A stretch of DNA of 64,000 bases from contig CM097887.1 of the NCBI GenBank assembly GCA_044892525.1, positions 11,346,001 to 11,410,000 of the forward strand, written 5' to 3'. Position 1 is the first letter of the stretch. Each line of letters starts with the position of its first letter. Of the stretch, positions 25,241 to 45,739 are shown one piece after another. A model generated the notes under the pieces. That model saw only the letters and a list, made by a program, of their open reading frames with translations, searched no databases and had not been told where the DNA came from. The DNA comes from Schmidtea polychroa (taxonomy: Eukaryota). Made by a program: the position numbers and the translations under genes.

Positions 25241-25283
25241 GGTGGGGTTGTTGATCCGCTGGAAGGGATCAAGTAGGGGGAAA

Positions 25284-25397
25284 TGTTTCGACCAGTTAGA
25301 GGGGGAATGACATTTACCACTGACTGGCAGTTTGTTTGCTGAGAGTATCGCGTCCGATTCTTGTTAGTGTGCGCAGACAGACGCGAGAAGTAGGTTT
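25284..25397 (-). repeat. Conserved double-hairpin terminal module, copy 1 (others at 31595-31765 and 40740-40872)
   Basis: All three copies share TGTTTCGACCAGT.AGA.GGGGAATG.CA.T.ACC.CTGACTGG and GTGCGCA.ACAGACGCGAGAAGTAGGTT. Confidence 0.9.
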
Positions 25398-25689
25398 TTC
25401 TATTTTTTATATTGTGGTTTATATTAATTTGTAGAATAGAATTGATTGTTTTCTGGAAGAACGGAATTTTTGTTTAAACGGGTCTTTTGGGTGAATTTTT
25501 TGAAATGAAGAATCCAAAAGAATCGTTTGAAAATGTTATTAAATCAATCTTTTTAGTTTTTAATGGACAAATTGCATGTTTAGAATTAAGCCCAATGTTG
25601 GCGTATGTGGGGAGAAAAGAAAAATTGTTTCGCTAGATGTATCATCACATTCATTCGACTCAGACCTTTCCCCAACTTCATCGATATTC

Positions 25690-25791
25690 CCTCGTGTGAG
25701 CCCGTGGCGATGTTCCACGTTGGTGATGCCCACACGGGTGGGAGTTGGTTAGCAGGTGAGCCCCTGCCTTAGGACTACTATTAACCCACTC
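25690..25791 (-). ncRNA. Conserved structured RNA element of unknown class (unit A copy)
   Basis: Helices GGUUA/UAACC, GCAG/CUGC, CGUGUGGGC/GCUCACACG and GUGG/CCAC covary with the unit B copy at 36757-36858. Confidence 0.6.
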
Positions 25792-26116
25792 GCGGTTCGG
25801 GTTCCACGGTGCCTTAGGTCTTACCCATAACCATACGTACAACTCGGTCCGACCCTGGTCCAAGGGGACGACCTCTAACCTAATGGCTTTCGTTCAAAAT
25901 CACCCTTTCATTCACACTGACCACAAATTTATACCTATCGAGAATTTACCATAATGAAATCAAACAAAAATATATTGAAGCCATAAACAAAATTACGCAC
26001 ACCAATTACAAAATCAGCAAAGTTTAAATCAATCAAGAATATACAAGGCTGTCAGTTTTCTAAACAAAATCCATTTGCAGTTCGAAAGAAAGAATCAAGA
26101 CCGATTGCAAGTTACT

Positions 26117-26878
26117 TTACACGAAATCTTCTCCTTCGGCAATCATCTCATCGATGTCGACTGGTAACCGACGATCCGATATAAATTTGAGGCCTTCGGC
26201 CGGAATTCTTCTAAAGACTTCTTTCGAGGGGATGGAATGGGTGGAAGATATTTCTTTGATTGTTGATTTCGCCGCAGATAAAGACGCCTCGAGTGCTGCC
26301 ATTGCATCTCTACGTTTCTGATTCTTTTCTGCTCTGGTGGGCCGTTTGCGTTTGCGAGGTGGCGGATTGTTGTCTACTGCAGATGTGACGACGGGTGCCA
26401 CAAGAACTGGAGCCAGGATAGAATCAGAAGGACCGCCTGCCATTGGCCGATAACCCGACAGTACCGGGGCTGGGATGGGCGGCAGATGTGAGCCGTGCCC
26501 TTGGCAGTTCGAGGTGGAAGATGTAGATGACTGGTGGTGAAGAGGAAAAACATTTGTTCCATCCAGGACGGGAAATTCTCGCACCCGCTTGGCCAGTTCC
26601 GCCTCCGTGTAGAACTTGTGGAGGGCTTCGGACTGGGCTTTGATCGTGAGCCTTTGACAGCGGCTCTCCTCCAGGAGGCTGTCTCGACAGTGCTCCAATC
26701 TGAGAATCTTAATCCGCTCTTCCTTCATCTGTGGCGGGGAGAACCAAGTTCCTTCGTATAGATCTATACGCTTTTTGAGAGCCCCAATGTAAAGGTGGAG
26801 TTGGGCTATATCCGCGTTCTTGTCTGCACAAGAAAAACACGGGCGAAGTTCCTTGATAGTGTTGGACGGTGTTGACAT
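26117..26878 (-). CDS. Unit A ORF, 253-aa coiled-coil protein (CxxC, basic NLS-like patch, acidic tail), family unknown
   Basis: Intact and GC-richer than its flanks. About 52/80 identical residues (my count) with 37142-37891 over the N-terminal domain. A YAG acceptor (CCTTCAG) lies immediately before the ATG. Confidence 0.8.
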   Translation of the reverse strand: MSTPSNTIKELRPCFSCADKNADIAQLHLYIGALKKRIDLYEGTWFSPPQMKEERIKILRLEHCRDSLLEESRCQRLTIKAQSEALHKFYTEAELAKRVREFPVLDGTNVFPLHHQSSTSSTSNCQGHGSHLPPIPAPVLSGYRPMAGGPSDSILAPVLVAPVVTSAVDNNPPPRKRKRPTRAEKNQKRRDAMAALEASLSAAKSTIKEISSTHSIPSKEVFRRIPAEGLKFISDRRLPVDIDEMIAEGEDFV

Positions 26879-29799
26879 CTGAAGGTTTAATCAGTTTTTA
26901 TGCGTAGCCGCAATATTCATTTGAGTGGTATTTACAATTTGGAATGCAGGCTTCAAAATTTCGTCAATCATACCGTTCAACGAAACCCCAAAACAACTCT
27001 TTACCCTATCTCGGCACTCACATTCATTTAATTATAAAACATTCAAATTAATTCACCCAATCCCAGTAATTTGAGAAAAAGAAAACGGGGAATCCTCGAA
27101 AAATAATTTACTTGATATAAAACTCAACATTTAGGTTTACTTTCGGATTGGATAGTTACCATTTGTTATTTTATTTGTTTGTTATTGTCAATTCCACCCC
27201 CTTTATTATATTTCGTAATATTTAATAATCCAAACCTTGTTACCGTGATTTGTTGATTTGTACATGCATAATGTTATAAAGTCATGATTCGGTGTCATTA
27301 GTGTCTAATTGTGAGGTCTTAATTCTGATCAAAGCTATAAAAATCAACATCTATTATTTAAAAATGTTTTAAAAATTATACGGTAATTACTTTAAGCAGT
27401 GCGCCGTAAACGTCGTCATAGTGACGCCTACTCGTATGTGACTGTGGGTTATCATTAATTCCTGCTGTGTAGATTAGTGCGTCATTGTTGTGTTGATCTG
27501 GGTATATGCATTTCATGAGTTATTACCTATCTGCACTATTAGAGAAAATTGCACGTCGTGTTAATTCGCGATGTGGTCCAATCCTTGCACACAATCTCGC
27601 CATCTCAGGCACTATCCATATCATTATGTAATCGTGATGTCATCGAAAAATTCACTGTTTAGATTTATTACTATCCTACCGGGTGGGAATTTGGCTATAG
27701 TGTGCCTGAATGCGTGTATTCTCAAGACAAGGTAATTGGAGGAGAAAGCTGAATCGTTACGAGTATGGGGCAAATCCGGAGAATAACGAGTGAACTAGAA
27801 TCGATAATCAGATTTTCTATCGTGTTGTTGACTCAAGACAACAACTGTCAATGCGTTCACTCAACAATCGTTGCGGAAATTAGTATACTATCTCTCCCAT
27901 CAGATTATGGCTGGTCATCTAATACGGTTAACTATAAACTGGCTAAAATTCGTTCAACGATTAACCGATAACGCTGACAGCGGTTTCTCTTATGCCTGTA
28001 GTAAGTATTCTGATAATTCATCATGATTTGTTTACTTTATTTTCAGGAAGAAAATGCTTATCAGTAACCCAAGAGTCAATAATTCAGTCTAAAAGTGCAT
28101 CGACGATGGATTTAGCAGCTAACGTCCTGGCGATCCAAACCTCGAAAAATTCATGGTGACCGTTTACTGGAATCTTATTCTAATTTTCGCGTAACTGAAG
28201 ACTACTATCCATGGTTGTTCAAGTAACTGCGATTCGAAGACTTAAGGAATAGTCGTGTCAAATTGGAATTTAATGAAATACCATCGCACACGGTGATGAA
28301 GATTTTTGGTTTACAGTTTCTCCGGGAGTCTCTATGGATTTAACATTAGCATCAAATGTCGTAGTTTCCAATTCTCTATGGACAGTACTTCCCATGCCGA
28401 TCACTGATCTCACTCGGTGAAAGAATCTCTCTCGATGCATTTATATCTTCCGCCAGATGTCCTCACCCCTCCTGACTCACCCAAGAACGGCATACATTTC
28501 TGCCACCGCTTAGACCGTCAGGAGGGACGAATCTATCTCTTCCATCTTCAAAAATAAATTGATAAATAAAAAAAATGGAATAAATAAATCAATTCTACCA
28601 AAATATTATTACAAAATGAAAATCATCTACCTGGCGACCGCGACGTCTGAGCTTCGGATATGATGCCTCATGCTACAATGTATTTCTCTCTATCATTTGG
28701 ATCATAAAATGCTGCATTCCATAGAAAATTACTCGGTTGACCTCAAGGAATTAAACTTCTCGTATCCATTCCCATTATGCTCCTCGCAATTCCTCCCCAT
28801 TCGCCGCATCACATCCGATTCCCAGACGACACCGTCGTCGGCACCATAGAAAAAGAGGCATCTTTGTGATTCAAATTTTTATTTAAATAAAATTATTGTT
28901 ATTGTTCATTATTCCATCATAATATACTAAACATTTATCATACGAAATTCAATCACTTACCAAAATTTCCCCTGAAAGTGTTGAAAGTATAAATCAAAGT
29001 GCCTCGAATAGTTTTCCAACTGAAATATTTGGTTCGTTAAAACTCGATCTCTGTCCGGTAAGTTTGAGTAAGTTTGAGTCAGTTTCCGATAGATGGTTCC
29101 TGTTCAATGCTATAGTATTGACTATGAAGTGGTTCTGTAGAGTATTTGTTAAAGTGGTTTGATAGGTTGCTAACTAGTCCTGTAGAATACTCGTTGAAGT
29201 GGTACCCAAAATTAACAAAAATTTTACCTGTAGAATACTCGTTAAAGTGGTACTCTACAGATATTTCGCATTCCTTTTATATTATTTTTCGTCCAATCAG
29301 GACACGACTTGTTTGTAATTTTATTATTATTTATATGTTTTTTATTATAATACACTGGATTTTAATGACCTTATCTATTTTTTGTTATTATTTTATTTAT
29401 TTTCCTATTTTTTATTATTTTCTCTTGTTTTTCCTGCGGATTTTTTGCTATTTCATTGTAATATAATTTTTTGTTATAATTAGTCTATGCATTTATTTGA
29501 GAATGGTTTTATTTCTATTTTATTTTCTTAATTTCTCGTTTATTTTCTTAAAAATTTTTTTTATTTTATTTTCCTTTTATTGTTAGGCTTATTGGGTGAT
29601 TTTCTTTTTATCTTATTTTCTTAGAAATTTTATTATTTTTATTTAGTTATTCCTATTTCTTTATTGTTATTTAATTTGTTTTTTCCTATATTTCTCTGTA
29701 GTTCTCTGTGAATTTTATTTTTTATTTATTCTATTCCTTCGTGTGGTCTCTTTTCTCATCTTTGACTCGACTTTCAACACTTCCAGAGCTTGACCCAAC

Positions 29800-30466
29800 A
29801 CCAAGTTGATGACAGGCTAATACACTAGGTTCAACACGAACACTTCGTACCAATAATTTTGCATCAACTCTGACATATTGGTCTCCCAGTTGCAGAAGTT
29901 AATGTTAGTGCGGAATATGATCTTTTCAAACGCATATGGACATTAACTCCCGGGAGTAAATATTTAGGCTGATCCATAAAGTCGAGTTGTAATGATGAGC
30001 ACATGGTAAATTATTTTGAGCCCTTAATCCACAATTTTCGTTCATTATCTGTAGCTGCATAACCCATTGGAGTAAGACAAGTATTTTTAGTATTGGTATT
30101 ATAATTTAAAATAGTTTCAATTATAGCCTTGTGAATATATGTATTGTTTCCACCTTCAATCTTGATATTATTAAAACCGAGAATAGAATCTTTAAAAAGT
30201 GTATGAAACAAGAATTTGTTCGGTATTACATCTGTAGCTTCACCCAAAGCTTTTTTATCTTTATCTACAACCTTAATCTGAACAGTTAATAAAGTATCGT
30301 TCAACTCCAAATATTCAGTTTGACTCCCGTTAATGTAAAATTCAACATCATTTCTACTATCTGTAAGAGAATTCATAGGAAATACTTCTTCAGAAGCCCG
30401 ATATTTAATTACGGCTTGAGGTGATGGTCGCTCAAATATACACAATTCAGATTTACCACAAATCAT
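29800..30466 (-). pseudogene. Polinton major capsid protein, N-terminal half
   Basis: CGKSELCIF..P.Q..PMNSL..VEFYING...EYLELNDT..FLFHTLF..NNTYIHKAIIETILNY..K; after a stop, LQLDFMDQPKYLLPGVNVHMRL..LLVRSVRVEPSVL. Confidence 0.85.
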
Positions 30467-30495
30467 TTTTCAAATATAGTCCCATGTCCTCTCAT

Positions 30496-31551: not shown

Positions 31552-31594
31552 TGGTTTGTTTAAACTGTATGCCAGTTGTCCCGATAATAGTTAC

Positions 31595-31765
31595 TGTTTC
31601 GACCAGTCAGAGGGGGAATGTCACTTACCTCTGACTGGCGGCTTGTTTGGAGGTTTTTGCATCGCGTCTGTGTGCGCGGTAAGATTGGACCGAGTTTTGT
31701 GAGTGTGCGCGGTAAGATTGGACCGAGTTTTGTGAGTGTGCGCACACAGACGCGAGAAGTAGGTT
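31595..31765 (-). repeat. Terminal module copy 2, with an internal 33-bp tandem duplication
   Basis: 11-bp stem CCAGTCAGAGG/CCTCTGACTGG and 16-bp stem TCGCGTCTGTGTGCGC/GCGCACACAGACGCGA enclosing (GTGTGCGCGGTAAGATTGGACCGAGTTTTGTGA)x2. Confidence 0.9.
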
Positions 31766-32099
31766 GTTTTTTTATAGTATAGTTCGGTTTTTTAGATTTG
31801 ATTTAGAATTGAGTGAGGTTGTTTTAAAAAGAGACTTTTTCTGGAAGAAAGAGTTACTATTATTTGAATTTCAATGAACAACCAAATTGATCCTGGTTCA
31901 GTTGCCCCTCTGTTATTACAACGGAAATAAATGACATGAAAATTGTAAGAAATTAATTAAAAGCTAATTAAATATTCAAAAATGTAAAATCAATAGTTTT
32001 GAGCAGGGATGGAGTCGATTGTTAAACGAGTACACCTTTTTTGAGACATCACTGTCGATTCTCCACCCACCATCGACATACTCGGCCAAGCAACTGTCA

Positions 32100-32680
32100 C
32101 AGTTTATTTTGTCTATGTATAATATCTCCATTATTCTTTCTTCATTTTTCACCAATTCAATATTCCACACTTTCCCCAGTTGCATTTCATTTAGTGACCA
32201 GTTTTCACTTAATGTTCTCATAAGCAATCTACAATGTCGTTCTCTGACTACTTCAGGTTTCAATTCCACAATTGACGCATTGTCTTTCATGTACATCTTT
32301 AGAGGCGTGCGAACGAGTTCAAGTGATGCGTGTTGTTTGAAACTGTTTGATAATTCGTTCAATTTCTCGGATAGATCCAAAACTTCTTATGCATTTTGAA
32401 CATTCTGACGCCCTTCTTTTAGTCTATTAAATTCCCCTTCAACGATTTGAATATTATTAACTGCTTCTTCAGGTGTCAGATCTCCTGCTGTTGGTTTTTC
32501 TTTTTCCCAATTACTCAACATTTCTGTTGTCTTTGGTTCATCAATTTTATCATCTGATAATTTTATGATCTGACCAGCCCGACAAGCCTCGTCTTGCTTT
32601 ACCCATGTATTCATTTTTCCTTTTATATTTTGTGTGTTCGTAATGACGTTAACTAATTCGTTAGTTCCTCCAGAATAGAA
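32100..32680 (-). pseudogene. DYNC1H1: Cytoplasmic dynein heavy chain tail-region fragment, intronless, with internal deletions
   Basis: TTEMLSNWEKEKPTAGDLTPEEAV..EGEFNRLKE and QHASLELV..LKMYMK.N..IVELKPE.VRERH..LM..L...W...EM.LGKVW..EL.KNE match dynein-1 heavy chain. Premature TAA at 32387. Confidence 0.85.
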
Positions 32681-32819
32681 TAATTGCTAATCTAATTCAT
32701 TTTGAGCTCTTTGCTCTTCATTAGAAGCCTTACTCCTGTCGAGTTGGGTTTCCTCAATTTCCCAAAATTCCCGTAACTCGTCATTTAACTTTTCCGTTTC
32801 CGCAAAATAACTCTATCAA

Positions 32820-35150
32820 ATGCAAACATCTTAGAGCTTGATTTTTGTAATGGCTTCCTTTTTTTTAATTTTTAGTAATAATTTTACAATGAAGAGTTAT
32901 CAAGTATTTCTTATCAAGTATTTAGGAAATGATACACTACTGTTATTAACATGCAATAAACAGTATCTTACTACACCAATGTTTCCAACCACCATATTGT
33001 CTGTGGTCCTGAACACCGTGAATAATGAAGATGCTTGCCATTTCTTTTTGTTTTAGAACTGACTACGATGTAAATGCCAAAGCGCTACTTGGGATTGTCA
33101 TGATTACACAGATGAAAATCATATCAATATGATTGTGAAAAGATGAGTTTTTAACACAATTTGTCAATTGACTTTCGTTTTTTAATAATGAAGAATTAAG
33201 TGATACTGTTATGTTGTGATCATTATTTTCCATTTTTGAGAAGTTATTGTTAAACAGATAAATCAGTTTATTTTCAATGAAGGTGACTTGCCATCGATGA
33301 GTTCGCTTTTCGCTTGCAATATTGAATTTTGATTACGAAATTTCTTGGTTTCGGTTCAGATACTGAGTTCGCTCTTAGTTGGTATTCGTTTAATACCTCC
33401 TGAATTTTATTGTTTACAAAAACATTTAGCCATTGTCTGACGCCTTGACGGATTGACACAATTATTTCCTTGTTCTCAATTTTTATTTGAACTTGGTTAG
33501 TTTCTTTAGCCAAGTATACTGCTTCATATTGACTTTGAACTTCTACCCATTGATTGGTCATATATGTCCCATTATCATGAATGAGTTTTTCGTAATAATG
33601 TATTGAAAGACTGTCGGTGAGATTTACTTGAAAATTTTTATATTTAACAAAACATTTTCTTTTATTTAATGTTTCAATCGTATGGTTTTGGAAAACAATT
33701 TTGACTTTCTGTTGCTCTTCTGCCTCTCAATATACATGAATTTCATTTATCATCGGTTCAATTTCATCAAAATTCCTCCACTCATTTTTCCAAATGTTAA
33801 TTTGTATAAGGTTATAAATTCTTTGAGTAGCGTTTGTTTGAACCACGTATTGTTTAATGGTTCAAGGTAATTTATAATTTGTTGTTAATCGACGCGCTTT
33901 TCTCATAATTCAACGTAACAGATGATTCTAAAGGATTCAATAGATTGCTAACTTCTATTTGTCATGATATTTCACAATGATATGTCCACACAATACTGGT
34001 AAACGTTGAATATATATAAATTTTATCCAATAAGGGTATTGTTATTCCACTTGCATTTGCTATGATATTTATTAAGACTACTGTTATAAATAAAACTTTA
34101 TTCATATATCCCAATGGCGTAGGGTTTTTTTGAAATTTTTGTTGAATGATTGTTCCATCGTTAAGTTCTTTTTGTTTTGATCGTAATTGATATTCCATTT
34201 CAGATACCTTTTTACATCGATTGGAATGAACTATAATTGTTTCTGCTCTTTTGTTATATATTGGATGTAACTTTAAATTAGTTGCCATAGCATCATACTG
34301 TGAATGAACCTTTGAATGGTCTTTGCAATTTTGTTGATAGGCCTTTTATTAGTTCTGGTTTGTTGAAATATACTAAATCTCCGATTTATATTCCATGCTC
34401 ATGCGCCTTTTTATCATAGCTTTCCTTGTATTGTTCTTGACGATACTTTATTTTTAACCCCATGCAGATTGTAATCGTTCTTGCATCATTACTTTATAAT
34501 TCTGAGCGTCCAATTATTGGGGGTTGAAATTCTAAATCAATTGGCATGTTGTTTCGTCTCAAATACATTAAATAAAAAGGTGTTTCGCCCGTACTCTCGT
34601 TAACTGCATTTAGATAGGCAAACAGACATGGTTTAATAAATAAGTCCCAATTCTTTTGTTTCCGATTCACATATGATGAGATCATATTGATTAAAGTACC
34701 ATTAAATCTTTCTACTAACCCATATGTCTGAAGGTGATTTATTCAGTTTGTAAATACCAAATAATTCTGTAATAGAGTTAAATAAATCACTTTGAAAATT
34801 TGTTCGTTGGTCTGTTAACAATTTCTTTAGAGCTCCATATCTAAATATAATCTTTTCGACAAATATTTGATCGACTATTTCTGCTTTCTGATTTGGTATT
34901 GCGTACGCCTCTGGTCATTTTGTTAAATAATCACAAAATACAACAATATATTTATTTCCATTTGTAGTCTCGGGTAAGGGCCCGATAATATCCATTACTG
35001 AAAATTGCATTGACGCTGCTGGTATTGGCATTGGTTTCAATGGAACCTTTATTTTCTTTCCCGTATTTCTTCGAGTTAGACAAATTTTGCACGTAGTATA
35101 CCAGTGCTTTACATCTTGGTACATTGTATTCCGATTCATCACTTTTATTA
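32820..35150 (-). mobile_element. Decayed gypsy retrotransposon 3' part: integrase followed by a possible env-like ORF
   Basis: CKIC..R..K.PL.P..MDIIGPLPETTNGNKYIVVFCDYLTK*PEA; RYGA..LLTDQ.TNFQS; WDLF..LFAY..NESTGETPFYL; IIVHSNR. A downstream hydrophobic leader (VLFITVVLINIIANAS) and Cys-containing fragments suggest env, which is weakly supported. Confidence 0.8.
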
Positions 35151-35154
35151 TACT

Positions 35155-36082
35155 TTAATATACCTTCGTGCTGGTTTTGCTCTTGGCGCGTTCGTTGAGT
35201 CTTGTTTGGAACGTTCTAAGCGTTTCGCCTATGTACGATGCGTCACATCTTGTGCAAGTGATTTGGTAAACAATGTTCTTTGAGAAGCAGAAACATTTGG
35301 TGGGGGATTGGCATATACAATCTCGATGAAATAGGTCTGATGTTAGAGATTTTTGAGACTTACGAAGCTGTGATTTCAAAGGTGCAGCAGTTGTAATAAT
35401 TGGGCGAATATGAACTGGCAGCACCATATTGCGAATGAAAGCTCTGATTGTATTACATGTCCATTGTTTAAAAAAGGAAGCGTTGGTATATTACTCGCTT
35501 ATTGATATGTTGCTTTTGTGTATTATGATGCCTATTAGAGTTATATTCACTCAAGAAGTATTTTTCTACGAACTCCTTTGGGTATCCATTTTGTAAAAAC
35601 CGTGTTTTAAAGTTTTCCAGGGTTTCTTGTGTTTTCGTTTTGTCCGAACAGTTCCGAATTGCTCTTTTTCTCTCTCCTACTAATAGAGTGATTTTTCTTT
35701 GGAGTGTAACGCGACTTTCCCACTGTGTAGACTTTTAGTGAATAAATCTGTGTTGAATGTGAGTGTGTTTGGACCTTCAGAAGGACTTATAATGGTATCT
35801 AGGAAAGCAATCTTCCCTTCTGGGTCAGGTAGCTCAAGAGTGAATTGTATATTAGTGTTAGTGGAGTTTGCATGTGCCAAGATTATATTGAGAGGTACCG
35901 TGGAGACTATGAAAATGTCATCAATGTATCTTTTCCACATCAGGATTTTATCTCCGAAAAATGATCAAAAATTTGATTCGAGATGATGCATGTAGAAAAT
36001 GGCTAAAATCGGCGAAAGGTTATTGTTACCCATAGCTAGACCATGAATTTGTTTGAACGGTTTTCCTTTAATTAATACAATA
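35155..36082 (-). mobile_element. Penelope-like element RT plus C-terminal GIY-YIG endonuclease (5' part in the gap)
   Basis: KQIHGLAMGNNNLSPILA; WKRYIDDIF; IQFTLE..IAFLD; ERKRAIRNCS..NGYP; CFSKNIVYQITCTRCDASYIGETLRTF.TRLNE. Frameshifted. Confidence 0.92.
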
Positions 36083-36756
36083 NNNNNNNNNNNNNNNNNN
36101 NNNNNNNNNNNNNNNNNNNNNNNNNNNNNNNNNNNNNNNNNNNNNNNNNNNNNNNNNNNNNNNNNNNNNNNNNNNNNNNNNNNNNNNNNNNNNNNNNNNN
36201 NNNNNNNNNNNNNNNNNNNNNNNNNNNNNNNNNNNNNNNNNNNNNNNNNNNNNNNNNNNNNNNNNNNNNNNNNNNNNNNNNNNNNNNNNNNNNNNNNNNN
36301 NNNNNNNNNNNNNNNNNNNNNNNNNNNNNNNNNNNNNNNNNNNNNNNNNNNNNNNNNNNNNNNNNNNNNNNNNNNNNNNNNNNNNNNNNNNNNNNNNNNN
36401 NNNNNNNNNNNNNNNNNNNNNNNNNNNNNNNNNNNNNNNNNNNNNNNNNNNNNNNNNNNNNNNNNNNNNNNNNNNNNNNNNNNNNNNNNNNNNNNNNNNN
36501 NNNNNNNNNNNNNNNNNNNNNNNNNNNNNNNNNNNNNNNNNNNNNNNNNNNNNNNNNNNNNNNNNNNNNNNNNNNNNNNNNNNNNNNNNNNNNNNNNNNN
36601 NNNNNNNNNNNNNNNNNNNNNNNNNNNNNNNNNNNNNNNNNNNNNNNNTTGGCTGTTTCGTTCGTGGCTAGTCTAAAGGTTGATTGCCCGTCCTGCATAG
36701 AATACTCTCACATTTCCAACCCGGAGTAGAACCCCCCCCCATAACTTGCACTCCAA

Positions 36757-36858
36757 CATAGTGCCCGTGAATTGCTTCACGTTGGTACTGCACTATGCAG
36801 GCGAGACACTAGTAAGCAGGTGAGCTTCTGCCTTAAAACTACTCCTTACTGAGGCCTC
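36757..36858 (-). ncRNA. Conserved structured RNA element (unit B copy)
   Basis: Helices AGUAA/UUACU, GCAG/CUGC, CAUAGUGC/GCACUAUG and GUGA/UCAC. The linkers AGUAGU..UAAG, GCUCAC and ACCAAC are conserved with unit A. Confidence 0.6.
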
Positions 36859-37141
36859 GACTTCCCATACTAGACGGTCGATAGAAGGGCTTACGTCATT
36901 TCGAACTATCCGAATATCTCAATTACCGGTAGATTTAATGCCAATTGGCTGACACTCATCAAACTTCGAAAAAATCTATGTGCATTTCTATGTTCAACCC
37001 TTACAAATGAAAACAACTGGAACAGAATAAATTTATTTCTTTTTCAAATATAAACAACACAAATTAATATACACAGTTGGAGGGGCCATACGAAGTAGTA
37101 ATAATGCAGTCGATATTCACTAGACTTTCTGCTTAAGAGTC

Positions 37142-37891
37142 TCATTTTCCCCACTCGGTATCTCGTAATAAATCATCGATGTCGAAGAATTCAGAAGCGT
37201 TTTCTTCCGATACTACGCCTGCGGCTGATATAATTCGCGCGGGGACCCCAATGGTCAAGTCGATCACCGCGGAACTGGTGTTTTGATTGGTCGGATTTTC
37301 CGCAGAGGCCTTGCTCTGACTACCTAGATTGCGTTCGCGCTGTCTCTTTTTGCGCTCCGCACGTGACAGTTGTTTGCGCTTAGGCTTGTTCGGAGCGGCA
37401 GTTTGTTGAAGCGTAGTTGAGGTGGACGTACTAGGGGTTAACGCCTTGCTAGTACCCCTGATGATAATATCTGGCTGCTTGGGCGACAGTTCTGCTTCGA
37501 CGCAACCTTGACAAGACCTTTTGAGCGGTGGAGACAGATTCGAGGAAGTATTATGATGAGGAGGGAAGATATTGTCGGCTTCTTTGATTGGGATCTGTAC
37601 GATCTTCCGTGTTGTGGCTGCTTGCACGTAGACTTTGTGCAGCGCTTCTGCCTGTTCTTTAATAAGACTTCTTTGGGCACGGCTCTCAGATATTAGTGCG
37701 TCCCGGCAATGCTCGCTACGATGGAGCTTCTTTTGGGTCTCCTTCATTTGAACGGGGGTGAACCAAGTGCCCTCCAACTCATCTATCTTCTTTTTGTATC
37801 GCCCGATTTGGGTTTGTAGATCTTTGATAATGGCGTTTTTATCCGCGCATGAGAAGCACGGACGTAATGCTGATGTAGTGGCTGGTATCAT
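37142..37891 (-). CDS. Unit B ORF, 249-aa paralog of 26117-26878
   Basis: LRPCFSCADKNA..EGTWF.P.QMKE..EHCRD.L..ESR.QR..IK.Q.EALHK.Y is shared, as are the basic patch and the DIDDLL tail. Intact frame. Confidence 0.8.
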   Translation of the reverse strand: MIPATTSALRPCFSCADKNAIIKDLQTQIGRYKKKIDELEGTWFTPVQMKETQKKLHRSEHCRDALISESRAQRSLIKEQAEALHKVYVQAATTRKIVQIPIKEADNIFPPHHNTSSNLSPPLKRSCQGCVEAELSPKQPDIIIRGTSKALTPSTSTSTTLQQTAAPNKPKRKQLSRAERKKRQRERNLGSQSKASAENPTNQNTSSAVIDLTIGVPARIISAAGVVSEENASEFFDIDDLLRDTEWGK

Positions 37892-40739
37892 GCTTGTTAT
37901 AAAGAATACTAATGAAATGTAGAATATACTATTTTCGAAACAAATTAGATACGACCCACGGCCATTCGTGGATGCTCGGCCGATGAAAAGAAGAGAAAAC
38001 TTATTCTACAATCCGGTTTTACTACAGATCTTATTTACTAAAACGGCTTATTTAACCAAATGCTATCGACTTGGCAAATGCTATTGCCTTCGATTCTCTA
38101 CTGATCTAACTGTATACATGAGGGATGTAGTAGTTAATAGTATTATAAGTATAATATTGACAAGGTAATGTAATAACGCTTTAGTAAAGGGAACATTATA
38201 GTATTCAATCAAAAAATTTTATAGGTTCTCTATTTTAATTTATCAAAAACAAATTACGGGTATTTCGCTAAACTAATTAGTGTGGAACTATCGCTATCCC
38301 TCAACATATTTTAATTCAAAATTCATTATTGGAAGTACTTTATTGATTCAACAGTTAATTTGGTTATCTGTGCTGTCTACTATTTATCTGGGAGAACGTC
38401 TGAAAGTTTTTCACATGTGCGTGAGGATTCCACATCAGCTGTTGCCTTAACACCCTAATTTACATTATTTCGTAGAGATGGGAAATCTCACCGGTCACGA
38501 CATATGTCTAAATTTACTGCTACTGATGTTGACTAGTTGATTTTCCCTAAAAATTGTTAAATCGCTTACGAAAACTTAGCAAGTTATATATTTAATTATT
38601 TTTTTAAAAAAAAAAGAAACTAATTCAATAGTAAAATTTGATACACTTCCACCTTTAATTCATTATATTTAATTATTTATTTGCAAAACACCGAGTTTAG
38701 GAATTTCAACAGTTGGGCTTAAGAACGTACAATCGCGCAATAGCGGTTATCATGACTCGGTATTCATTTTCTCTGTGGCCGATGATTCTTATCTAATCAT
38801 TGGAAACTACTGGCTGCGTGTTGGCAAGAAGTTCTCATGTCAATCGGTAATTGTGAACTCGCTTATTGCTGAGTCTAATCGCAGAAAAAACAAATGGGTG
38901 ACACATGGAAAATTTTCTCATCTGATTACGTTAGTAGTGACGACATTATCGCAAATGGGTGTATACCGATGGATTCATTCCGGGTCTTGTGATCGGTGTG
39001 TGCCGGTGAGTGTAGTTACTCCACTAAATTCTAATCCGATTAGTATTTTTGATTGAAATTCCTGATGTTGAATTCACTGAGTTGATCTTAGCCAATATGA
39101 AAAGTTTAGTTGTCAATCCCATCTCGTCGTTATTGTTGGATATACTACTTTTGTGGATATTTTATTAAATCATTCGGAATGCCTTCTCTAATCTCGACTC
39201 GTTGATGACGATTATTTTGGGAATTTAGCAGGTGAATTTTCATGCACTGGCCTACGTATAGGCCGTTCGGGGGTAGTTTTTATTTTATGTAATAATAACC
39301 AAAATATAAATTTTATATGTGTTGACTTGTCTTCAATTGAAATCTTTGATTATAATCTACCACATGAATCTCCTACTGTCAGAATCGGTGTTCCAAAAAT
39401 GAAGTTGCTTGTGTAACTGATGGTGAATGGTCGTTTTGAAAAGAGGAAACAATTTGGCGATATACGAGGTTTACCCTACTGACGGAATTAAAGTATTTCA
39501 AATCGGTGGCCGAAGATAAAGAATTTTCGCATGCGAGTGTTGTAAAATCGTTGTTAATACGAAGGTGATAGACCCGCTCAGTCACTGTGAACTACTACCC
39601 TTATTCCAATAAATCAGATATCACTACACTCCTTCGGTTCTACTTTCCCATTTTTTATTCTAAGTCACCTTCAGCGATTGGACCCGTGAAGAAGCCTTCA
39701 CATTTCGGCCCAATCTAGCTGCGTGATTGAAATACTCCATGTCCACCGGCTGAGCTCCCGAAGGCACCTCATACCATGAAATGGAGTATCTCAACTCCAC
39801 GTTACTCATCAAATGAAAATTCATAAACTCTCTAATTCAAATAATAACACATAGACATCTGGATAAAAATTATTTATTGGTTCTATAATACTTAAACATG
39901 CAAATTTCATTAAAACATTAAAAATTACTAAATATGGAATCAAATGAAGAGAGTTAACTAAGATGTTTAATCGCTAATATTTAACATTACTATTGACTTT
40001 GAAAGTACTTAAATAAATCGATAAACAAATGAAATACTCCTTACTATTGTTTAGGCTGAGTCAAAATTCAATGTTGTTCGTTCCAAATAAGTCTAATAGT
40101 GGTCCGTCGAATGTGGATTATGGTGATGAATAGTATTTCAGTCCCTGAACTGGTTTCGAATAGTTGTGAAGTTTTCTAAATAAAGGTTGCTTGGCTAGTA
40201 GTGCTTTTCCTTGAAATAGAATTCCGTGAATAGTGAATGTCTATAAAATGCTCGGGGTTAACAGTAAACTTTAAACATTCTCTCTTACCTATAAAATGCT
40301 CGGAGTTAACAGTAAATTTAATGATTTTGGTGGTTGTATATATAGCAAATTCTTATTTGTGCGGACCAATCAGAGTTGAGTACCGCTTATTTCTATTAAT
40401 TTAATATAATTTTCTTGTTTTTAGGTTGTTTTTCCTTATTTTCTTTATTTTTAATGTTTTTCTATTTATTTCCTTAATTTCCTTATTATTTCTTAAATTC
40501 CTCCTTATTTATTTGTCAACTTGTTGTTCTATTTTAATCTTTTCTTAATTTTATTTTTTTTTTTAATTCTTATGTCTTAATTATTATTTTCCTTATATCT
40601 TATTCTATTTTATCTCTGATTTCATTTATTTTATTTTTATTTTCCTTAATGTTCTACTTTCTTACTTTCTTATTTTTCAACGATTAAATTTTCGACTCAG
40701 CCCAACATTATTATTATTATTATTTATTATTATTATTAT

Positions 40740-40872
40740 TGTTTCGACCAGTGAGATGGGGAATGTCACTCACCTCTGACTGGTAGTTTGTTCGACGTTT
40801 CCTTTTGTTTCGCGTCTATGTGAATGGATCGAATATTGTTGGGGTGCGCACACAGACGCGAGAAGTAGGTTT
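40740..40872 (-). repeat. Terminal module copy 3, followed on the minus strand by an (AAT)n tail (about 40707-40740)
   Basis: Same motifs as copies 1 and 2. It abuts the 5' end of unit B. Confidence 0.88.
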
Positions 40873-42039
40873 AATTGTTTTGTTTTTTGATGAAATTGAG
40901 ATTTATTTGTAGAGAAATTATGATTTCGTTTGTCTGAATAAAATAATTGGAATTGTGTTCTGAAACTTGTAAATTTTCGAATTGTTTTCTGGAATTGTGA
41001 ATGCTTTATAATTATAATTGTTTATCTGTCATTCGAAACCGGAACGTCATTTTAAAAAGGCAGTGCGGAAAATTCGTCAGTATCAAAATATATTACTGAT
41101 TTATAGTCTTTTAAACTCTTTTTAATAAATTCAATTGAAAAAATAATCAGTGGTGAAATTNNNNNNNNNNNNNNNNNNNNNNNNNNNNNNNNNNNNNNNN
41201 NNNNNNNNNNNNNNNNNNNNNNNNNNNNNNNNNNNNNNNNNNNNNNNNNNNNNNNNNNNNNNNNNNNNNNNNNNNNNNNNNNNNNNNNNNNNNNNNNNNN
41301 NNNNNNNNNNNNNNNNNNNNNNNNNNNNNNNNNNNNNNNNNNNNNNNNNNNNNNNNNNNNNNNNNNNNNNNNNNNNNNNNNNNNNNNNNNNNNNNNNNNN
41401 NNNNNNNNNNNNNNNNNNNNNNNNNNNNNNNNNNNNNNNNNNNNNNNNNNNNNNNNNNNNNNNNNNNNNNNNNNNNNNNNNNNNNNNNNNNNNNNNNNNN
41501 NNNNNNNNNNNNNNNNNNNNNNNNNNNNNNNNNNNNNNNNNNNNNNNNNNNNNNNNNNNNNNNNNNNNNNNNNNNNNNNNNNNNNNNNNNNNNNNNNNNN
41601 NNNNNNNNNNNNNNNNNNNNNNNNNNNNNNNNNNNNNNNNNNNNNNNNNNNNNNNNNNNNNNNNNNNNNNNNNNNNNNNNNNNNNNNNNNNNNNNNNNNN
41701 NNNNNNNNNNNNNNNNNNNNNNNNNNNNNNNNNNNNNNNNNNNNNNNNNNNNNNNNNNNNNNNNNNNNNNNNNNNNNNNNNNNNNNNNNNNNNNNNNNNN
41801 NNNNNNNNNNNNNNNNNNNNNNNNNNNNNNNNNNNNNNNNNNNNNNNNNNNNNNNNNNNNNNNNNNNAATACGCAAACTATCAATCATAAAATTTGTCAA
41901 AATTTCAACAAGCCCTTGAAAATTAACTTGTAAAATTTTTATAAAAATTGTTATTATCAAATAAATGTGCATAAATAATAATACTTAGGATAATTTACAA
42001 CTGATTTTATAGTTTTTATTTGATAACTTTATAGTGAAT

Positions 42040-42330
42040 TAATTTATGGCTTAAATTAGCAATCAATGTAAAATTTGCATCTAAACGTACTATTAATAGC
42101 GAAAGATTTTCAATTAGAACTACCAACGATGTGGTCGATAAAAATTAAACTTTACAGTATTAAAAGATGCAATTCGATACTTTTGCAGTTTAACCGAACC
42201 ATTTTAAAATATATCAAATAAATAAATATATGTAATACTTACATAACCTTTGGAACTACCAACCCAGTTGAGAACATGTGGATAAAGATAAAACTATTAT
42301 ACAAATCTAGATTATAAACTCAAAAAATGT
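42040..42330 (+). mobile_element. Tc1/IS630-type transposase relic
   Basis: TNPVENMW.KIK resembles the (D)LNPIEN.W catalytic motif; the rest is decayed. Confidence 0.35.
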
Positions 42331-43399
42331 TATTTCTGTAAAGACAAAAATATTGCAGATCATTTTCCCGATTCCTTGATTGTGTTAAAGTTTTTCATTT
42401 ATATCAATTATTTATACCAAATATTTATTAATATAGTATAACAAGGGTGGATATTTTCAATGATTTCAGTGATAGATTACGAGATCGATATAAAGAACTT
42501 ATTGCGCTTCAAATACTCAATTAAATTTTGGTTTATAAATTTAATATAAAACAATATTACATAATTTTAATATAAAATGTACTAACTTGAATTACATGTC
42601 ATGCAAAAACATAACTAGATTCATTTCCTATTCATTTTCCTATTCAATTACTATGTCATCCACTTCTACAATATAAAAAATAAATTATGAAATATTTAAC
42701 ATACAATAAAAATTGTATTAAATAATTAATAAATTTTTCATTTTTAACATTTACTTAACAAAGAACTCTCTAAATAAAATTTCAAATGTGATTAAAACAA
42801 ATAAATTTAATAATTGTAAATAATATAATAAACATTTAATATATATTATTCTAATTAATATTTTTTTATAACCTTCGTAAATCTATATTTTTTTTAAATG
42901 AATAATTTACAGTAGTTATTGAAATAATGAGAAAATACAATATAATCTTAAAAGTTTGGAAAAATAGTTGAGATTAAATGACATCAATTATAAATTGCAC
43001 AAAATTTCTAAAAACAATATTGTTAGATGAAGAATACTTAAATATTCTGTTTCCAATGAAATCTAACCATGATATTTATAAATTCTAATGTGAGACATGT
43101 CTCTTATAAACGTTGGTACTGTGTTATATATAATCATAAACTAGGGTAAGTATGAGGAGTTTTACTCCTGCAACTGCTAGGGCTTTACATCCAATACTGG
43201 TTCTTGTCCAAATTAAAATTAATAATAATGAAAATTTGAAAAAATCAATGTTTAACTGGAGCCTGTACGTGCAACTCTGAGAGCTAGATTAATTACTTTA
43301 TGCGGCTCCCTAAATACTGAAAAAAACTTTGAAATTGTACGTTTTCTTTATCGCAAATTTATTCTGTTAAAATAAAATAAAATATTTAATTCAAAATAT

Positions 43400-44030
43400 C
43401 TAACAATAAAAATGGAATGTAAAAATGGCGCAATCTTTTTTTTGGCGTTATAAAAAAGAAAAATTTGACATTATTGTTGGCGTTTGGCAGCTTTCTTAGC
43501 CCTTTTACTTGGCATTTCTGGGCGAACGCTTCATGTGTTGTAGGCCGTTGTAGAATTTCATTGGCCGGAGAACTTGACACATAAAGATTGATCAATGGTG
43601 ATGACTGCCGGACACTTGACGAAGGTATAGGTGTAGCGTGAACAGATGAGGTTACCAGTATGGAACATCTGCTACAGCAGAAGGCCGTTTGAAAGTGTCA
43701 CTGCAAGAAAAATGATGAACTGGGATGGGATTTGTCAGTTTTGCTGATGAAAGCCCATGAATTCGATGCGCCAATTCTTGTTGGATATATACCTGATAGA
43801 ATGTTTGAGATTGCTATTGTATCAGCGTGCCTTAGGCACGACTTTCTTCGATTAGATTATCCCTGTAGTGCTCCAGGCGGAGCACTTTCTGGGTTGATTC
43901 TTTCATGGTGTACCATGTTCCTTTCATTCTGTCGATTTTCGCATTCAATAATCAGTTGAGTTCGGTTGAGCATGTTCTTGTCTGAATATGAGAAGCTGGG
44001 TCGGATTTCAGTTCGGTCTGAGTTATTTTC
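43400..44030 (-). pseudogene. Unit C ORF, third (disrupted) paralog of the coiled-coil ORF
   Basis: EIRPSFSYSDKN; after a frameshift, KIDRMKGTWYTMKESTQKVLRLEHYRDNLIEESRA*..QSQTFYQVY; basic PSKRAKKAAKRQ. A degenerate copy of the RNA motif (AGUACCAACGU) lies at about 43090-43200. Confidence 0.8.
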
Positions 44031-45739
44031 TGTATTGGTAAAAAGGAAATATATAAACAATGGAGACAGCATTTAAAGATAACCATGACTTTATACTGAT
44101 AATACTTTCAGGGTTATCATGAAGAGTTTAGGTGAAAGATTTCGGTATGGACTGGTCAGCTTTAGGAATGATGACGACTCTAGACAAAAATTAGTATGAT
44201 TATTATAATAAGAACGCAAATACTCATATTTGTGATATGATCAAAACAACATTTGAGGTTGATGGTGTTCCTAATAATAATGATAACAGTAATTAACTAA
44301 TAATCTTAACATCAGTCATCACTTTGAAAGTCGCACTGGAAGAAAACATATATTCTTAATTACAATCGCAATAATACTATTAATTGCAATTGTATCAATA
44401 GTCTTGATCAAGATGATTAATGGAAATAATAATAAAAATCGTATACATTGTCATTGTTATACTAGTGCTAAGAGGTGCATTCACGTGAGTAATAATAATG
44501 AAAAAGTTAGTTATAATAATAATAATAATGCTAATACTAACTACTCAGGTTAATCGATCATATACAGGTTTTTCAAAATATGTCAACTGCTCGAGTCAGA
44601 GCCGATTTGGGTTTTCTGAAGGTTTCATTTTTAGGTATTTCATTTGACTGCTATAGGGGCTACCCTCCCGATAGTTACATCATCGGGTTCGGGGTGAAAA
44701 CCTCTTTCTAACACTCTCAAGATCTCGATATTTATCCGAGGGAATGGAACGCTATTTATCCATTTATGTGAGAAATATCCATATGGTTTTTCTGACACTT
44801 ATATGTATACTGGAACCCTTTAAAATGGATCTTATAAGATTTATTGCGATTATCATGAAGTATGTCTGATTAGTCGATTTACCTGGCGAATTGCTAGTTT
44901 CGATTTCTTAAGGGAATTTAAGATTTTTGGAAAATAATTATCGGTTGAGGCTTTCTCGCTTTACTGAGTGAATCATAAAATGTTATATAAAATCAACATG
45001 TCCCTGACTTTAGGTTGGATTAGTTGACCTAATTTAATGTGTATGGTCCTAGATACTAGTGAGGGTCATTTCAGCTTCTGTGGAGACTCTTTCCATCCAC
45101 TACTGTTCAGGTTTTGTTTACTCCATGATGCATTGAATGAATAGAATTTAGTATTTTACTAGTCAGAAATGACTTCTAAATGACTCAAAAATGACCTCTA
45201 TGAGAACTTCGCTACGTTCATCTACTGGTGACTTGAAAACTTTTCGCATCATCAAGGAGAGAAACATCCAGTGTTTCCCCACCCGATGATGCAAGATGCC
45301 TCCATCCTATATATCTATAAAAATCAAACACAACAATATATAAAAGAATTTTAAGTGACCTTTTAAAAATTTAATCAAACAAATATCATATGAAAATTAT
45401 ACACTTTTCTAAATGAGGGAGAACGAACGAGGCTTAGATTAATAAATTATAATTATAACAAATGATTAAAAAGCATATAAAATCATCGATACATAAATTT
45501 AAACTAAAAATTTGCCTATAGCGAGATTTGAAATTGTAATAAAAAAGTTCCCAATATGAAATTCTAATGAATAAAGATGACAAATTTTAGAAGTTGCTTC
45601 TTGATAATTCGTTCTTTCAATTCACTCTAAGATATTGCATTGATCTTCAATAAACTGCAAAAGGTTCTTTCAAAGCTGACTCGATTTTGTAATCCACACT
45701 TGCAGCCAGAATAATAATTTTCACTAAATAAATACAAAA

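What the first reader, a model, noticed from the sequence alone, without database searches (positions are those of the whole stretch)
25241..45300. Unnamed element family in three diverged copies with a conserved 250-aa protein
Seen: three minus-strand units encode the same coiled-coil protein (A 26117-26878 and B 37142-37891 intact; C about 43400-44030 broken). A and B share one architecture: purine-rich leader, CCAAT motif with short tandem repeats, about 2 kb of decayed sequence, a splice acceptor directly before the ORF, the ORF, a structured RNA, then a double-hairpin end. C shows the acceptor, the broken ORF and a degenerate RNA motif. A and B keep about 65% aa identity over 80 residues and intact frames while nearly all neighbouring elements are ruined. 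Unit A is a discrete ~4.5-kb insertion that splits a Polinton capsid gene without a clear TSD, so the unit is mobile. Established: the protein matches no transposase, gag or integrase family I recognise. Inference: a possibly undescribed element, most simply an ORF1-bearing, Penelope-dependent retroelement whose ORF is under purifying selection.
Basis: partly seen in the sequence, partly recalled or inferred. Interest (0 to 1): 0.88.

Follow-up and report, generated by a model that had tools for sequence, protein, structure and literature searches.

The report
Mobile element family carrying small protein
A diverged family of roughly 4.5-kb mobile DNA units, each carrying one conserved gene for a small helical, arginine-rich protein that no protein or structure database recognises, has inserted into other transposons here; it most likely copies itself through RNA with a borrowed reverse transcriptase, but its class is not settled.

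Summary
Two intact minus-strand ORFs (26117-26878, 37142-37891) and one broken copy (43694-44009) encode the same protein. A and B share a 62%-A leader, a CCAAT/TATA-like motif, a ~2-kb spacer with splice-like ends, the ORF and a 3'-UTR hairpin with compensatory changes.

A ~110-170-nt terminal block ends at the same six bases in three places (25284, 31595, 40740), each with a different flank. B's own end is hidden in the gap at 36083-36648.

Unit A (25284-29800, 4,517 nt) interrupts a Polinton gene without a target duplication, and the two flanks are in phase.

The protein has no Pfam, PDB or fold match. Nine weak relatives exist elsewhere, each fused in gene models to a different host-gene fragment, so the family is dispersed in at least one other genome. 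Synonymous sites between A and B are saturated while the N-terminal domain is conserved.

Best reading (0.45): a non-autonomous, ORF1-only retroelement of Penelope-like style. A rolling-circle-like DNA element, a deletion derivative of an ORF1+RT element and a local gene cluster are not excluded.

The parts
25284..29800 (-). Unit A, the only copy seen from end to end (4,517 nt)
   Evidence: The 3' end is fixed by the point where similarity to copies X and C-end stops. The 5' end is approximate, set by the end of the upstream Polinton reading frame and weak similarity to B's start. The flanking frames are in phase if exactly this length is discounted.
26117..26878 (-). ORF A, intact, 253 aa
   Evidence: GC is 52% against about 30% background.
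29330..29800 (-). A-rich leader of unit A (62% A)
   Evidence: The similarity to B's leader is largely compositional.
29272..29300 (-). CCAAT-type (CTGATTGG) plus TATA-like motif of unit A
   Evidence: Promoter function is inferred, not tested.
26879..28960 (-). Intron-like spacer of unit A: GTAAGT at its start and AG directly before the ATG
   Evidence: No similarity to B's spacer and no Pfam domain. Splicing is not tested.
25685..25800 (-). Conserved 3'-UTR hairpin module of A
   Evidence: 71% identity to B over 82 nt. 8 of 22 pairs changed on both sides. The fold energy is not exceptional, z -0.35.
25284..25518 (-). 3' terminal region of A; the core block 25284-25396 has two hairpins and ends in GAAACA
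36649..40707 (-). Unit B, visible part; its 3' end is presumed to lie in the gap 36083-36648
   Evidence: Homology to A runs to the gap edge.
37142..37891 (-). ORF B, intact, 249 aa
36745..36865 (-). Conserved 3'-UTR hairpin module of B
40336..40373 (-). CCAAT-type plus TATA-like motif of unit B
40708..40739 (-). (AAT)11 microsatellite between the C-end block and B's 5' end
40740..40948 (-). Terminal region 'C-end' (core 40740-40871), lying directly upstream of unit B. It is either the 3' end of copy C or a pseudo-LTR-like partial copy belonging to B.
   Evidence: The gap 41161-41867 prevents assignment.
43694..44009 (-). ORF C, broken copy (one part; 2 stops, at least 1 frameshift, C-terminal half not detectable)
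43100..43190 (-). Remnant of the 3'-UTR module in C (exact 12-mer shared with B at 43110-43121)
31595..31886 (-). Copy X: 3' terminal region only, no ORF; contains a 33-nt internal duplication; abuts a Polinton integrase fragment
31976..32860 (-). Dynein heavy-chain (DHC_N2) pseudogene fragment directly upstream of X, same orientation
   Evidence: Pfam E 2e-7. The reading shows in-frame stops.
35158..36082 (-). Decayed Penelope-like RT/GIY-YIG remnant next to the gap after B (a neighbour, probably not part of B)
   Evidence: GIY-YIG at E 0.003, below the Pfam cut-off. The RT motifs were read by eye; Pfam RVT was not detected.
24857..25283 (-). Downstream flank of unit A: 142-codon open frame of the interrupted Polinton gene (capsid-like; identity not verified)
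29801..30466 (-). Upstream flank of unit A: fragments of the same interrupted Polinton gene (broken)
   Evidence: The Polinton context comes from polymerase B at 21844-22329 (E 1e-9), a protease-like piece at 24486-24782 (E 0.009) and an integrase at 31300-31590 (E 4e-7).

Best explanation
These are copies of a diverged, dispersed family of non-autonomous mobile units of about 4.5 kb.

Each unit carries:
- its own Pol II-type promoter motif;
- a long 5'-UTR spacer with splice-like ends;
- one gene for a small protein (a helical hairpin domain, a disordered Ser/Pro-rich linker, an arginine/lysine-rich helix and an acidic tail);
- a conserved hairpin RNA in the 3' UTR;
- a sharply bounded 3' terminal block with two hairpins.

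Most likely mechanism (inferred): the unit is copied through an unspliced RNA by target-primed reverse transcription. The reverse transcriptase is supplied in trans and recognises the structured 3' end. This would be in the manner of Penelope-like elements, which tolerate introns, form head-to-tail partial tandems and often leave no target duplication. The protein would act like an ORF1 protein, multimerising through the helical hairpin and binding the element's RNA through the basic helix.

Shown: the family, its parts, a TSD-less insertion, a copy reduced to its 3' end, and constraint on the protein.

Inferred: the RNA route, the source of the RT, splicing, and the protein's role.
For: 1. 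Three 3' ends stop at the same six bases with unrelated flanks, and an invariant 20-mer occurs 3 times against 0.00 expected.
2. Copy X keeps only the last ~290 nt. This 5' truncation is typical of target-primed reverse transcription.
3. X is preceded by co-oriented fragments of other transcripts: a dynein pseudogene, a Gypsy integrase and a Penelope-like remnant. A template-switching RT would produce this.
4. Unit A sits in a Polinton gene with no TSD (the longest shared flank word is 5 nt) and with in-phase flanks.
5. The C-end block, (AAT)11 and B's 5' end lie head to tail.
6. Splice-like signals bound a ~2-kb spacer of similar length but unrelated sequence in A and B.
7. PMC8557442 describes for Penelope-like elements: partial tandems, 5' truncation, frequent lack of discernible TSDs, a retained 5'-UTR intron, host genes retrotransposed in trans, and non-autonomous derivatives that share only the 3' end.
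8. A Penelope-like remnant shows that such RTs existed in this genome.
9. The 3'-UTR hairpin has 8 of 22 compensatory pairs.
10. The protein is constrained: in the N-terminal domain pN is 0.34 against pS of 0.84, which is saturated. Both ORFs are open over about 250 codons at about 50% GC.
11. Nine relatives elsewhere are each fused to a different host-gene fragment. None of them carries an RT domain.
Against: - No autonomous element with the same 3' block is in the window.
- No hammerhead or other ribozyme was found, even at E up to 1.
- The A-rich leader lies upstream of the predicted promoter, so an RNA from that promoter would not carry it.
- The first 40 nt of A and B are not significantly alike.
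- Only one copy is seen end to end.
- The terminal hairpins show no covariation, and the fold energies are ordinary.
- Splicing is untested.
- All copies lie in one 20-kb stretch in one orientation, which local duplication could also produce.
- The in-phase flanks have a one-in-three chance expectation.
Confidence: 0.45

Rival explanations
1. This is a DNA-level, TSD-less transposon of rolling-circle (Helitron-like) or another single-strand type. It would be a non-autonomous element keeping only the ends of its autonomous partner and carrying a captured or private gene with its promoter and intron.
For: - The insertion is clean, without a TSD, and leaves the flanks in phase.
- A hairpin ends 8 nt before the 3' terminus.
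- The promoter-upstream leader and the intron-like spacer travel with the unit.
- Internal sequence is heterogeneous between shared ends.
- A host gene fragment (dynein) lies next to the X end.
- Relatives are fused to fragments of many host genes.
Against: - The termini read TGTT...AACA, not 5'-TC and 3'-CTRR.
- The flanks are not A and T.
- No Rep/helicase was found among the reading-frame pieces scanned.
- X looks 5'-truncated.
- The adjoining fragments are all co-oriented.
Confidence: 0.18
2. The family is an autonomous Penelope-like element with an upstream ORF1. B would be a full-length copy whose RT-endonuclease continues behind the gap, and A an internally deleted derivative.
For: - A Penelope-like RT/GIY-YIG remnant in the same orientation starts right after the gap that follows B's 3' UTR.
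- PMC8557442, Fig. 1 legend, shows that some Penelope-like elements have a coiled-coil ORF1 separated from the RT by a frameshift with a pseudoknot.
Against: - B aligns to A's non-coding 3' UTR right up to the gap edge, and A needs only ~340 nt more to reach its end. That fits inside the estimated 566-nt gap.
- The RT part missing upstream of the visible motifs would need well over 566 nt.
- The remnant is broken by stops and frameshifts while ORF B is intact.
- The remnant is cut off by a Gypsy integrase fragment, not followed by the terminal block.
- None of the nine outside relatives carries an RT domain.
Confidence: 0.15
3. This is a locally duplicated host gene family, not mobile, that happens to lie in a transposon-rich stretch.
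For: - All copies lie within 20 kb on one strand, with 3' ends spaced 4.4-6.3 kb apart if B ends in the gap.
- Each complete copy has its own promoter-like motif and intron-like spacer.
- The ORFs are intact and constrained.
Against: - Unit A lies inside a Polinton gene with in-phase flanks.
- X cuts a Polinton integrase.
- The flanks of the three ends are unrelated.
- Outside relatives sit next to at least seven different host genes.
Confidence: 0.1

Closest known systems
Penelope-like elements and their non-autonomous derivatives (MRC1-type elements of Chlamydomonas; animal retrozymes)
   Same: - Head-to-tail partial tandem (C-end block directly before B).
- A 5'-truncated copy (X).
- No discernible target duplication.
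- An intron-like stretch kept in the 5' UTR.
- A host gene fragment attached to an element 3' end.
- Non-autonomous forms that share only the 3' end with a partner (PMC8557442; 10.64898/2026.07.22.740005).
   Different: - No RT or GIY-YIG domain in the complete unit.
- No hammerhead ribozyme.
- Known non-autonomous derivatives are non-coding, whereas this one keeps a conserved protein gene.
- No partner was seen.
HAL1 (half-L1), the ORF1-only derivative of mammalian LINE-1
   Same: A non-autonomous unit that keeps only a first-ORF-type protein and would rely on an RT supplied in trans (PMC5753468).
   Different: - The protein is unrelated to L1 ORF1p; no Pfam hit of any kind.
- No poly(A) tail.
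- No TSD.
- An intron-like spacer is present.
- A structured 3' end replaces an A tail.
Helitrons (rolling-circle transposons)
   Same: - No TSD.
- A hairpin a few bases before the 3' end.
- Heterogeneous interior between conserved ends.
- Association with host gene fragments.
   Different: - The termini are not TC...CTRR.
- The target is not A|T.
- No Rep/helicase nearby.
- One copy is truncated at the 5' side.
The Helitron features are taken from my own knowledge of Kapitonov and Jurka 2001 and later reviews.
Coiled-coil ORF1 proteins of some Penelope-like elements (Athena/Terminon type)
   Same: A small, largely helical first ORF upstream of a structured RNA (Fig. 1 legend of PMC8557442).
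   Different: Those ORF1s sit in RT-bearing elements.

Membership tests
Penelope-like element (autonomous) | Penelope-type reverse transcriptase inside the unit | tested here: not met
   Unit A has no coding remnant apart from the ORF. For B the question is open because of the gap.
Penelope-like element (autonomous) | GIY-YIG endonuclease inside the unit | tested here: not met
   None in A. The only GIY-YIG hit (E 0.003) lies beyond the gap after B, in a decayed neighbour.
Penelope-like element (autonomous or dependent) | Pseudo-LTR formed by a partial upstream tandem copy | tested here: inconclusive
   A terminal block lies directly upstream of B, separated by (AAT)11. B's own 3' block is hidden in the gap, so the two cannot be compared. 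A has no upstream block.
Penelope-like element (autonomous or dependent) | Hammerhead ribozyme in the terminal repeat (absent in the Naiad and most Chlamys clades) | tested here: not met
   No Rfam family at gathering score in the window, nor at E up to 1 in 25000-45500.
Penelope-like element (autonomous or dependent) | Retained intron in the 5' UTR | tested here: inconclusive
   GTAAGT and AG-before-ATG signals bound a ~2.1-kb spacer in A, with like signals in B. No transcript data.
Non-autonomous derivative of a retroelement | 3' end shared with an RT-bearing partner | not testable with these tools
   No partner is in the window. One metagenome scan with the invariant 20-mer gave only a chance hit in a GC-rich bacterial contig. 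The host genome was not available.
HAL1-type ORF1-only LINE derivative | Protein homologous to a LINE ORF1p | tested here: not met
   No Pfam family for A, and only Rootletin at E 0.028 for B. No PDB match. Best Foldseek E-value 0.43.
HAL1-type ORF1-only LINE derivative | A-rich or simple-repeat 3' tail and a target duplication | tested here: not met
   A and X end in GAAACA directly against unrelated flanks. Only C-end is followed by (AAT)11. No TSD at A.
Helitron | 5'-TC and 3'-CTRR termini, inserted between A and T | tested here: not met
   The termini are TGTT...AACA. The flanking bases differ between copies.
Helitron | Hairpin close to the 3' end; no TSD | tested here: met
   The second hairpin ends 8 nt before the terminus. 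No TSD.
Helitron | Rep/helicase in an autonomous partner | not testable with these tools
   None among the reading-frame pieces scanned in the window. The host genome was not available.
Polinton accessory gene | The gene is part of the Polinton gene set rather than an interruption of it | tested here: not met
   The unit separates two in-phase fragments of one Polinton reading frame. Copies also occur outside Polinton genes (B, C).

The most novel reading that the evidence does not exclude
This is a so far undescribed kind of protein-coding parasite of retroelements. It would be an intron-keeping, TSD-less unit that encodes only a small helical, arginine-rich RNA-binding protein of a new family. 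Its spread would rely on a structured 3' end read by a foreign (Penelope-type) reverse transcriptase, and it would be present in more than one animal genome.
Probability: 0.25. Interest if true: 0.75.

Novelty: new variant of a known kind. Interest (0 to 1): 0.52.

Why it matters
Non-autonomous derivatives of Penelope-like elements known so far are non-coding. The one well-known ORF1-only retroelement (HAL1) belongs to LINE-1.

A coding, intron-keeping, ORF1-only unit with a conserved 3' RNA would do three things:
- It would show that a helper protein can be worth keeping even when the polymerase is borrowed.
- It would give a handle on how Penelope-type reverse transcription chooses its templates and keeps introns.
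- It would explain a set of chimeric gene models in public proteomes, in which this protein is fused to fragments of unrelated host genes.

Even if the class turns out different, the protein is a new family tied to mobile DNA.

Tried and rejected
**Searches with the protein**
- Word-indexed search with ORF A found nothing.
- The profile search added only one protein.
- Exact look-ups of ORF A, P0003, P0005 and P0006 for genomic context found nothing on record, so no DNA of the outside relatives could be examined.
- UniParc-only names gave no organism.

**Searches with DNA and RNA**
- The metagenome scan with the invariant 20-mer gave one chance hit in a GC-rich bacterial contig.
- Rfam (two modes) and tRNA scans were empty, so no ribozyme, tRNA-like or known RNA family was found.
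- Fold energies of the 3'-UTR regions were no better than shuffles. Only the covariation count supports the structure.

**Capsid identity of the interrupted Polinton gene (could not be verified)**
- Pfam found nothing.
- PDB sequence search found nothing meaningful. One call failed through my frame slip.
- Two IMG/VR scans found no relatives.
- A single-sequence AlphaFold model was too poor to search with (pLDDT 41.5).

**Host organism**
- The search with the young Gypsy pol found only 37-46% identical proteins from flatworms, Trichuris and arthropods. The host remains unidentified.

**Considered and rejected**
- An endogenous delta-agent-like antigen (coiled coil plus arginine-rich motifs): there was no Pfam hit and no ribozyme.
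- A zinc-finger reading of the N-terminal Cys pair: the cysteines are not conserved in the relatives.
- A bacterial-type promoter/terminator scan, which is irrelevant here.

Full report
**Gaps**

The window has three N runs: 23812-23957, 36083-36648 and 41161-41867. The long 'ORFs' through them are artefacts.

At 36083-36648, the high-coordinate side is B's 3' UTR. It still aligns to A's 3' UTR up to the gap edge, with B 36649 matching about A 25625. The low-coordinate side starts in the middle of a decayed Penelope-like reverse transcriptase, followed by a weak GIY-YIG match (E 0.003, below the Pfam cut-off).

The two sides are therefore not one reading frame and not one element. A needs about 340 more bases from the matching point to its end, which would fit in the estimated 566-base gap. 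B's end is most simply hidden there.

At 41161-41867, the gap separates C's ORF and RNA remnant from the terminal block at 40740-40871. Whether those pieces are one copy cannot be told. I did not try to fill either gap.

**The proteins**

ORF A (26117-26878, 253 aa) and ORF B (37142-37891, 249 aa) are intact and homologous. BLASTP gives E 3e-46, with 36% identity overall and 63-64% over A residues 7/10-90.

A third copy, C (43694-44009), matches both at E about 1e-15. It has two stops in its 85-codon single-frame stretch, at least one frameshift, and no detectable C-terminal half.

The ORFs are about 50% G+C in a window that is mostly 23-36%.

**The units**

Read on the minus strand, A and B share the following, in order:
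- A leader that is 62% A. Its similarity between copies is largely compositional.
- CTGATTGG at equivalent places. There are 6 in the window against 1.3 expected. TATA-like runs follow it.
- Short private tandem repeats.
- A stretch of about 2.1 kb that begins with a GTAAG-type signal and ends with AG at or 1 nt before the ATG.
- The ORF.
- A 3'-UTR module: A 25685-25800 and B 36745-36865, 71% identical over 82 nt. 8 of 22 predicted pairs are changed on both sides. An exact 12-mer of it lies at a colinear place in C.

The 2-kb stretch is not 'the same sequence decayed'. It shows no similarity between A and B at DNA or protein level and no Pfam domain. Its length, about 2.1-2.4 kb in both copies depending on which donor-like site in B is taken, is the one thing that resembles. 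Fold energies of the 3' UTRs are ordinary, with z about -0.3, so the structure rests on the covariation count from two sequences only.

**The ends**

A terminal block opens with an invariant 20-mer, found 3 times against 0.00 expected. It holds two hairpins and stops at the same six bases (GAAACA) at 25284 (A), 31595 (X) and 40740 (C-end). Beyond those bases the three sequences are unrelated.

It keeps only about 290 nt of 3' end, carries a 33-nt internal duplication and has no ORF.
- C-end is followed by (AAT)11 and then at once by B's 5' end.
- The hairpins are conserved, but none of 24 pairs shows a compensatory change.
- The loop of the second hairpin holds a conserved GGTRAGT, with a TATA-like run upstream of the invariant 20-mer in two of the three copies.

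That last feature would suit a pseudo-LTR-like promoter and first exon. This is my inference and is untested.

**Mobility**

The surroundings are a decayed Polinton:
- polymerase B at 21844-22329 (E 1e-9);
- an adenovirus-type protease hint at 24486-24782 (E 0.009);
- an integrase core at 31300-31590 (E 4e-7).

Unit A (25284-29800, 4,517 nt) lies between two fragments of one minus-strand reading frame. The long open frame above the unit leaves two bases and the one below leaves one base. They are therefore in phase if exactly the unit is discounted (one-in-three by chance). There is no target duplication; the longest shared flank word is 5 nt.

X abuts the integrase core, whose N-terminal part is missing. 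Three ends with three unrelated flanks exclude a segmental duplication.

I could not verify that the interrupted gene is the capsid gene.

**Relatives elsewhere**

The exhaustive profile-free search of 1.84 billion representatives with ORF B gave 8 proteins at E 1e-6 to 6e-4. A profile search added a ninth. All nine are known only from UniParc.

They share the same roughly 100-residue core. Twelve columns are invariant across ten sequences: in ORF A numbering W45, P48, L68, E71, R73, Q75, R76, I79, Q82, P112, H115 and P150. An arginine-rich run follows the core.

Seven of the nine are fused to a fragment of a different host protein:
- sodium:neurotransmitter symporter;
- subtilase;
- glycine-cleavage P protein;
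- actin;
- CRAL-TRIO;
- ribosomal L21;
- ABC transporter.

The other two, P0006 and P0008, carry no recognisable partner domain. None of the nine has an RT domain. They fall into at least four subfamilies, 31-84% identical in the core. This is the signature of a dispersed ORF that gene predictors join to whatever lies next to it.

**The protein**

Database searches found no relative:
- No Pfam family: none for A, and only Rootletin at E 0.028 for B.
- No PDB sequence match beyond those caused by the fused symporter.
- No Foldseek PDB match better than E 0.43.

The AlphaFold model built on the ten-sequence alignment has a confident helical hairpin (helices 17-42 and 49-89, pLDDT above 90). After it come a short helix, a disordered stretch (about 102-180), a basic helix (182-212) and a short acidic C-terminal helix.

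One relative's arginine run weakly resembles the Rev arginine-rich motif (E 0.0013).

**Selection**

Between A and B, synonymous differences are saturated: pS is 0.73 overall and 0.84 in the N-terminal domain. Non-synonymous differences are 0.34 in that domain and 0.53 in the rest.

The domain has therefore been conserved over a long divergence. That is constraint on the lineages that gave rise to the copies, as in any active family. It is not proof that these copies serve the host.

By my own arithmetic, a random 250-codon frame at 50% G+C stays open about 6 times in a million. Both copies are therefore either young or maintained.

**What it most likely is**

The following features fit the behaviour described for Penelope-like elements (PMC8557442):
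- a fixed 3' end;
- a copy reduced to that end;
- the co-oriented mosaic upstream of X (Penelope-like remnant, Gypsy integrase, dynein pseudogene);
- the missing TSD;
- the head-to-tail junction before B;
- an intron-like stretch that travels with the unit.

That description covers partial tandems, 5' truncation, often no discernible TSD, a retained 5'-UTR intron, host genes copied in trans, and non-autonomous forms that share only the 3' end.

I therefore favour a non-autonomous, ORF1-only retroelement that borrows such an RT (confidence 0.45). Its protein would act as a multimerising RNA binder.

Against this:
- no partner is seen and there is no hammerhead;
- the leader lies upstream of the predicted promoter;
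- there is only one complete copy;
- all copies are clustered on one strand.

**Rivals**

- A Helitron-like DNA element (0.18) fits the clean TSD-less insertion, the hairpin 8 nt from the end and the heterogeneous interior. It fails the terminal TC/CTRR and A|T target tests.
- An autonomous ORF1+RT element with B as a full copy (0.15) needs the gap to be far larger than estimated, and an intact ORF1 beside a ruined RT.
- A local gene cluster (0.10) does not explain the interrupted Polinton genes or the many fusion partners elsewhere.

**Novelty**

I could not consult transposon libraries (Repbase, Dfam), so 'unnamed' means unknown to Pfam, the PDB and the papers I could search. The closest concepts are HAL1 (ORF1-only, PMC5753468) and non-coding Penelope derivatives (10.64898/2026.07.22.740005). 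A coding, intron-keeping form would be a new variant.

While judging whether the two flanks of the interrupted Polinton gene are in phase, I read their ends one after the other in my reasoning. I stopped, built and saved no joined sequence, and replaced the step with the phase arithmetic, which prints only counts. One search failed because of a frame error of mine; I corrected the coordinates.

Noticed in passing
55215-60966: A young Gypsy-type LTR retrotransposon on the minus strand. It has two identical 300-nt LTRs (55215-55514 and 60667-60966), an intact 1,084-codon pol frame (RT, RNase H, integrase) and a 276-aa gag with DUF7041. The best outside relatives are only 37-46% identical (flatworms, Trichuris, arthropods).
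   Followed up: partly
31595-36082: A mosaic of co-oriented fragments with no element boundaries between them: Penelope-like RT/GIY-YIG remnant, then Gypsy integrase (and possibly env), then unknown sequence, then a dynein heavy-chain pseudogene, then the X terminal block. It looks like a template-switched cDNA or a series of deletions. Unexplained.
   Followed up: partly
24000-61000: Nearly every transposon fragment in this stretch is on the minus strand: the three ORF units, X, the Penelope-like and Gypsy fragments, the dynein pseudogene and the young Gypsy. The Polinton polymerase B is the exception. This one-strand arrangement is reminiscent of a uni-strand small-RNA cluster. Not tested.
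   Followed up: no
25284-25396, 31595-31765, 40740-40871: The loop of the second terminal hairpin holds a conserved splice-donor-like GGTRAGT. A TATA-like run precedes the invariant 20-mer in two of the three copies. The block could double as a promoter and first exon for whatever lies downstream.
   Followed up: no
ORF B 37142-37891; relatives P0003 and P0005: B has a VIDLT-type run and P0003/P0005 have IYIDL, both resembling SUMO-interaction motifs. P0003 and P0005 also carry a PPPY run, a WW-domain or late-domain type motif. Neither motif is in ORF A.
   Followed up: no
18100-18561: A fragment of an IS1595/ISXO2-like DDE transposase (Pfam E 1e-19). In eukaryotes this is the Merlin superfamily.
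   Followed up: no
2108-4067: Three plus-strand pieces that match the WD domain of LRWD1 in order (E 2e-15, 2e-9 and 1e-9). This is probably a host gene and the only one seen in the window.
   Followed up: no
10697-10776 and 12550-12650: A near-palindromic 70-80-nt repeat, 91-93% alike, is present twice 1.8 kb apart. It encloses sequence similar, in inverted orientation, to the LTR/gag region of the young Gypsy element (11197-11703 against 60354-60809).
   Followed up: no
9899-10210; 45656-46105; 49668-50400; 63412-63948: Four short-unit satellite arrays, with periods of 12, 25, 14 and 42 nt.
   Followed up: no
P0001-P0009 (outside the window): Public gene models fuse this transposon protein to fragments of unrelated host genes. 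These models are probably mis-annotations caused by the element's strong acceptor-like site just before its start codon.
   Followed up: partly
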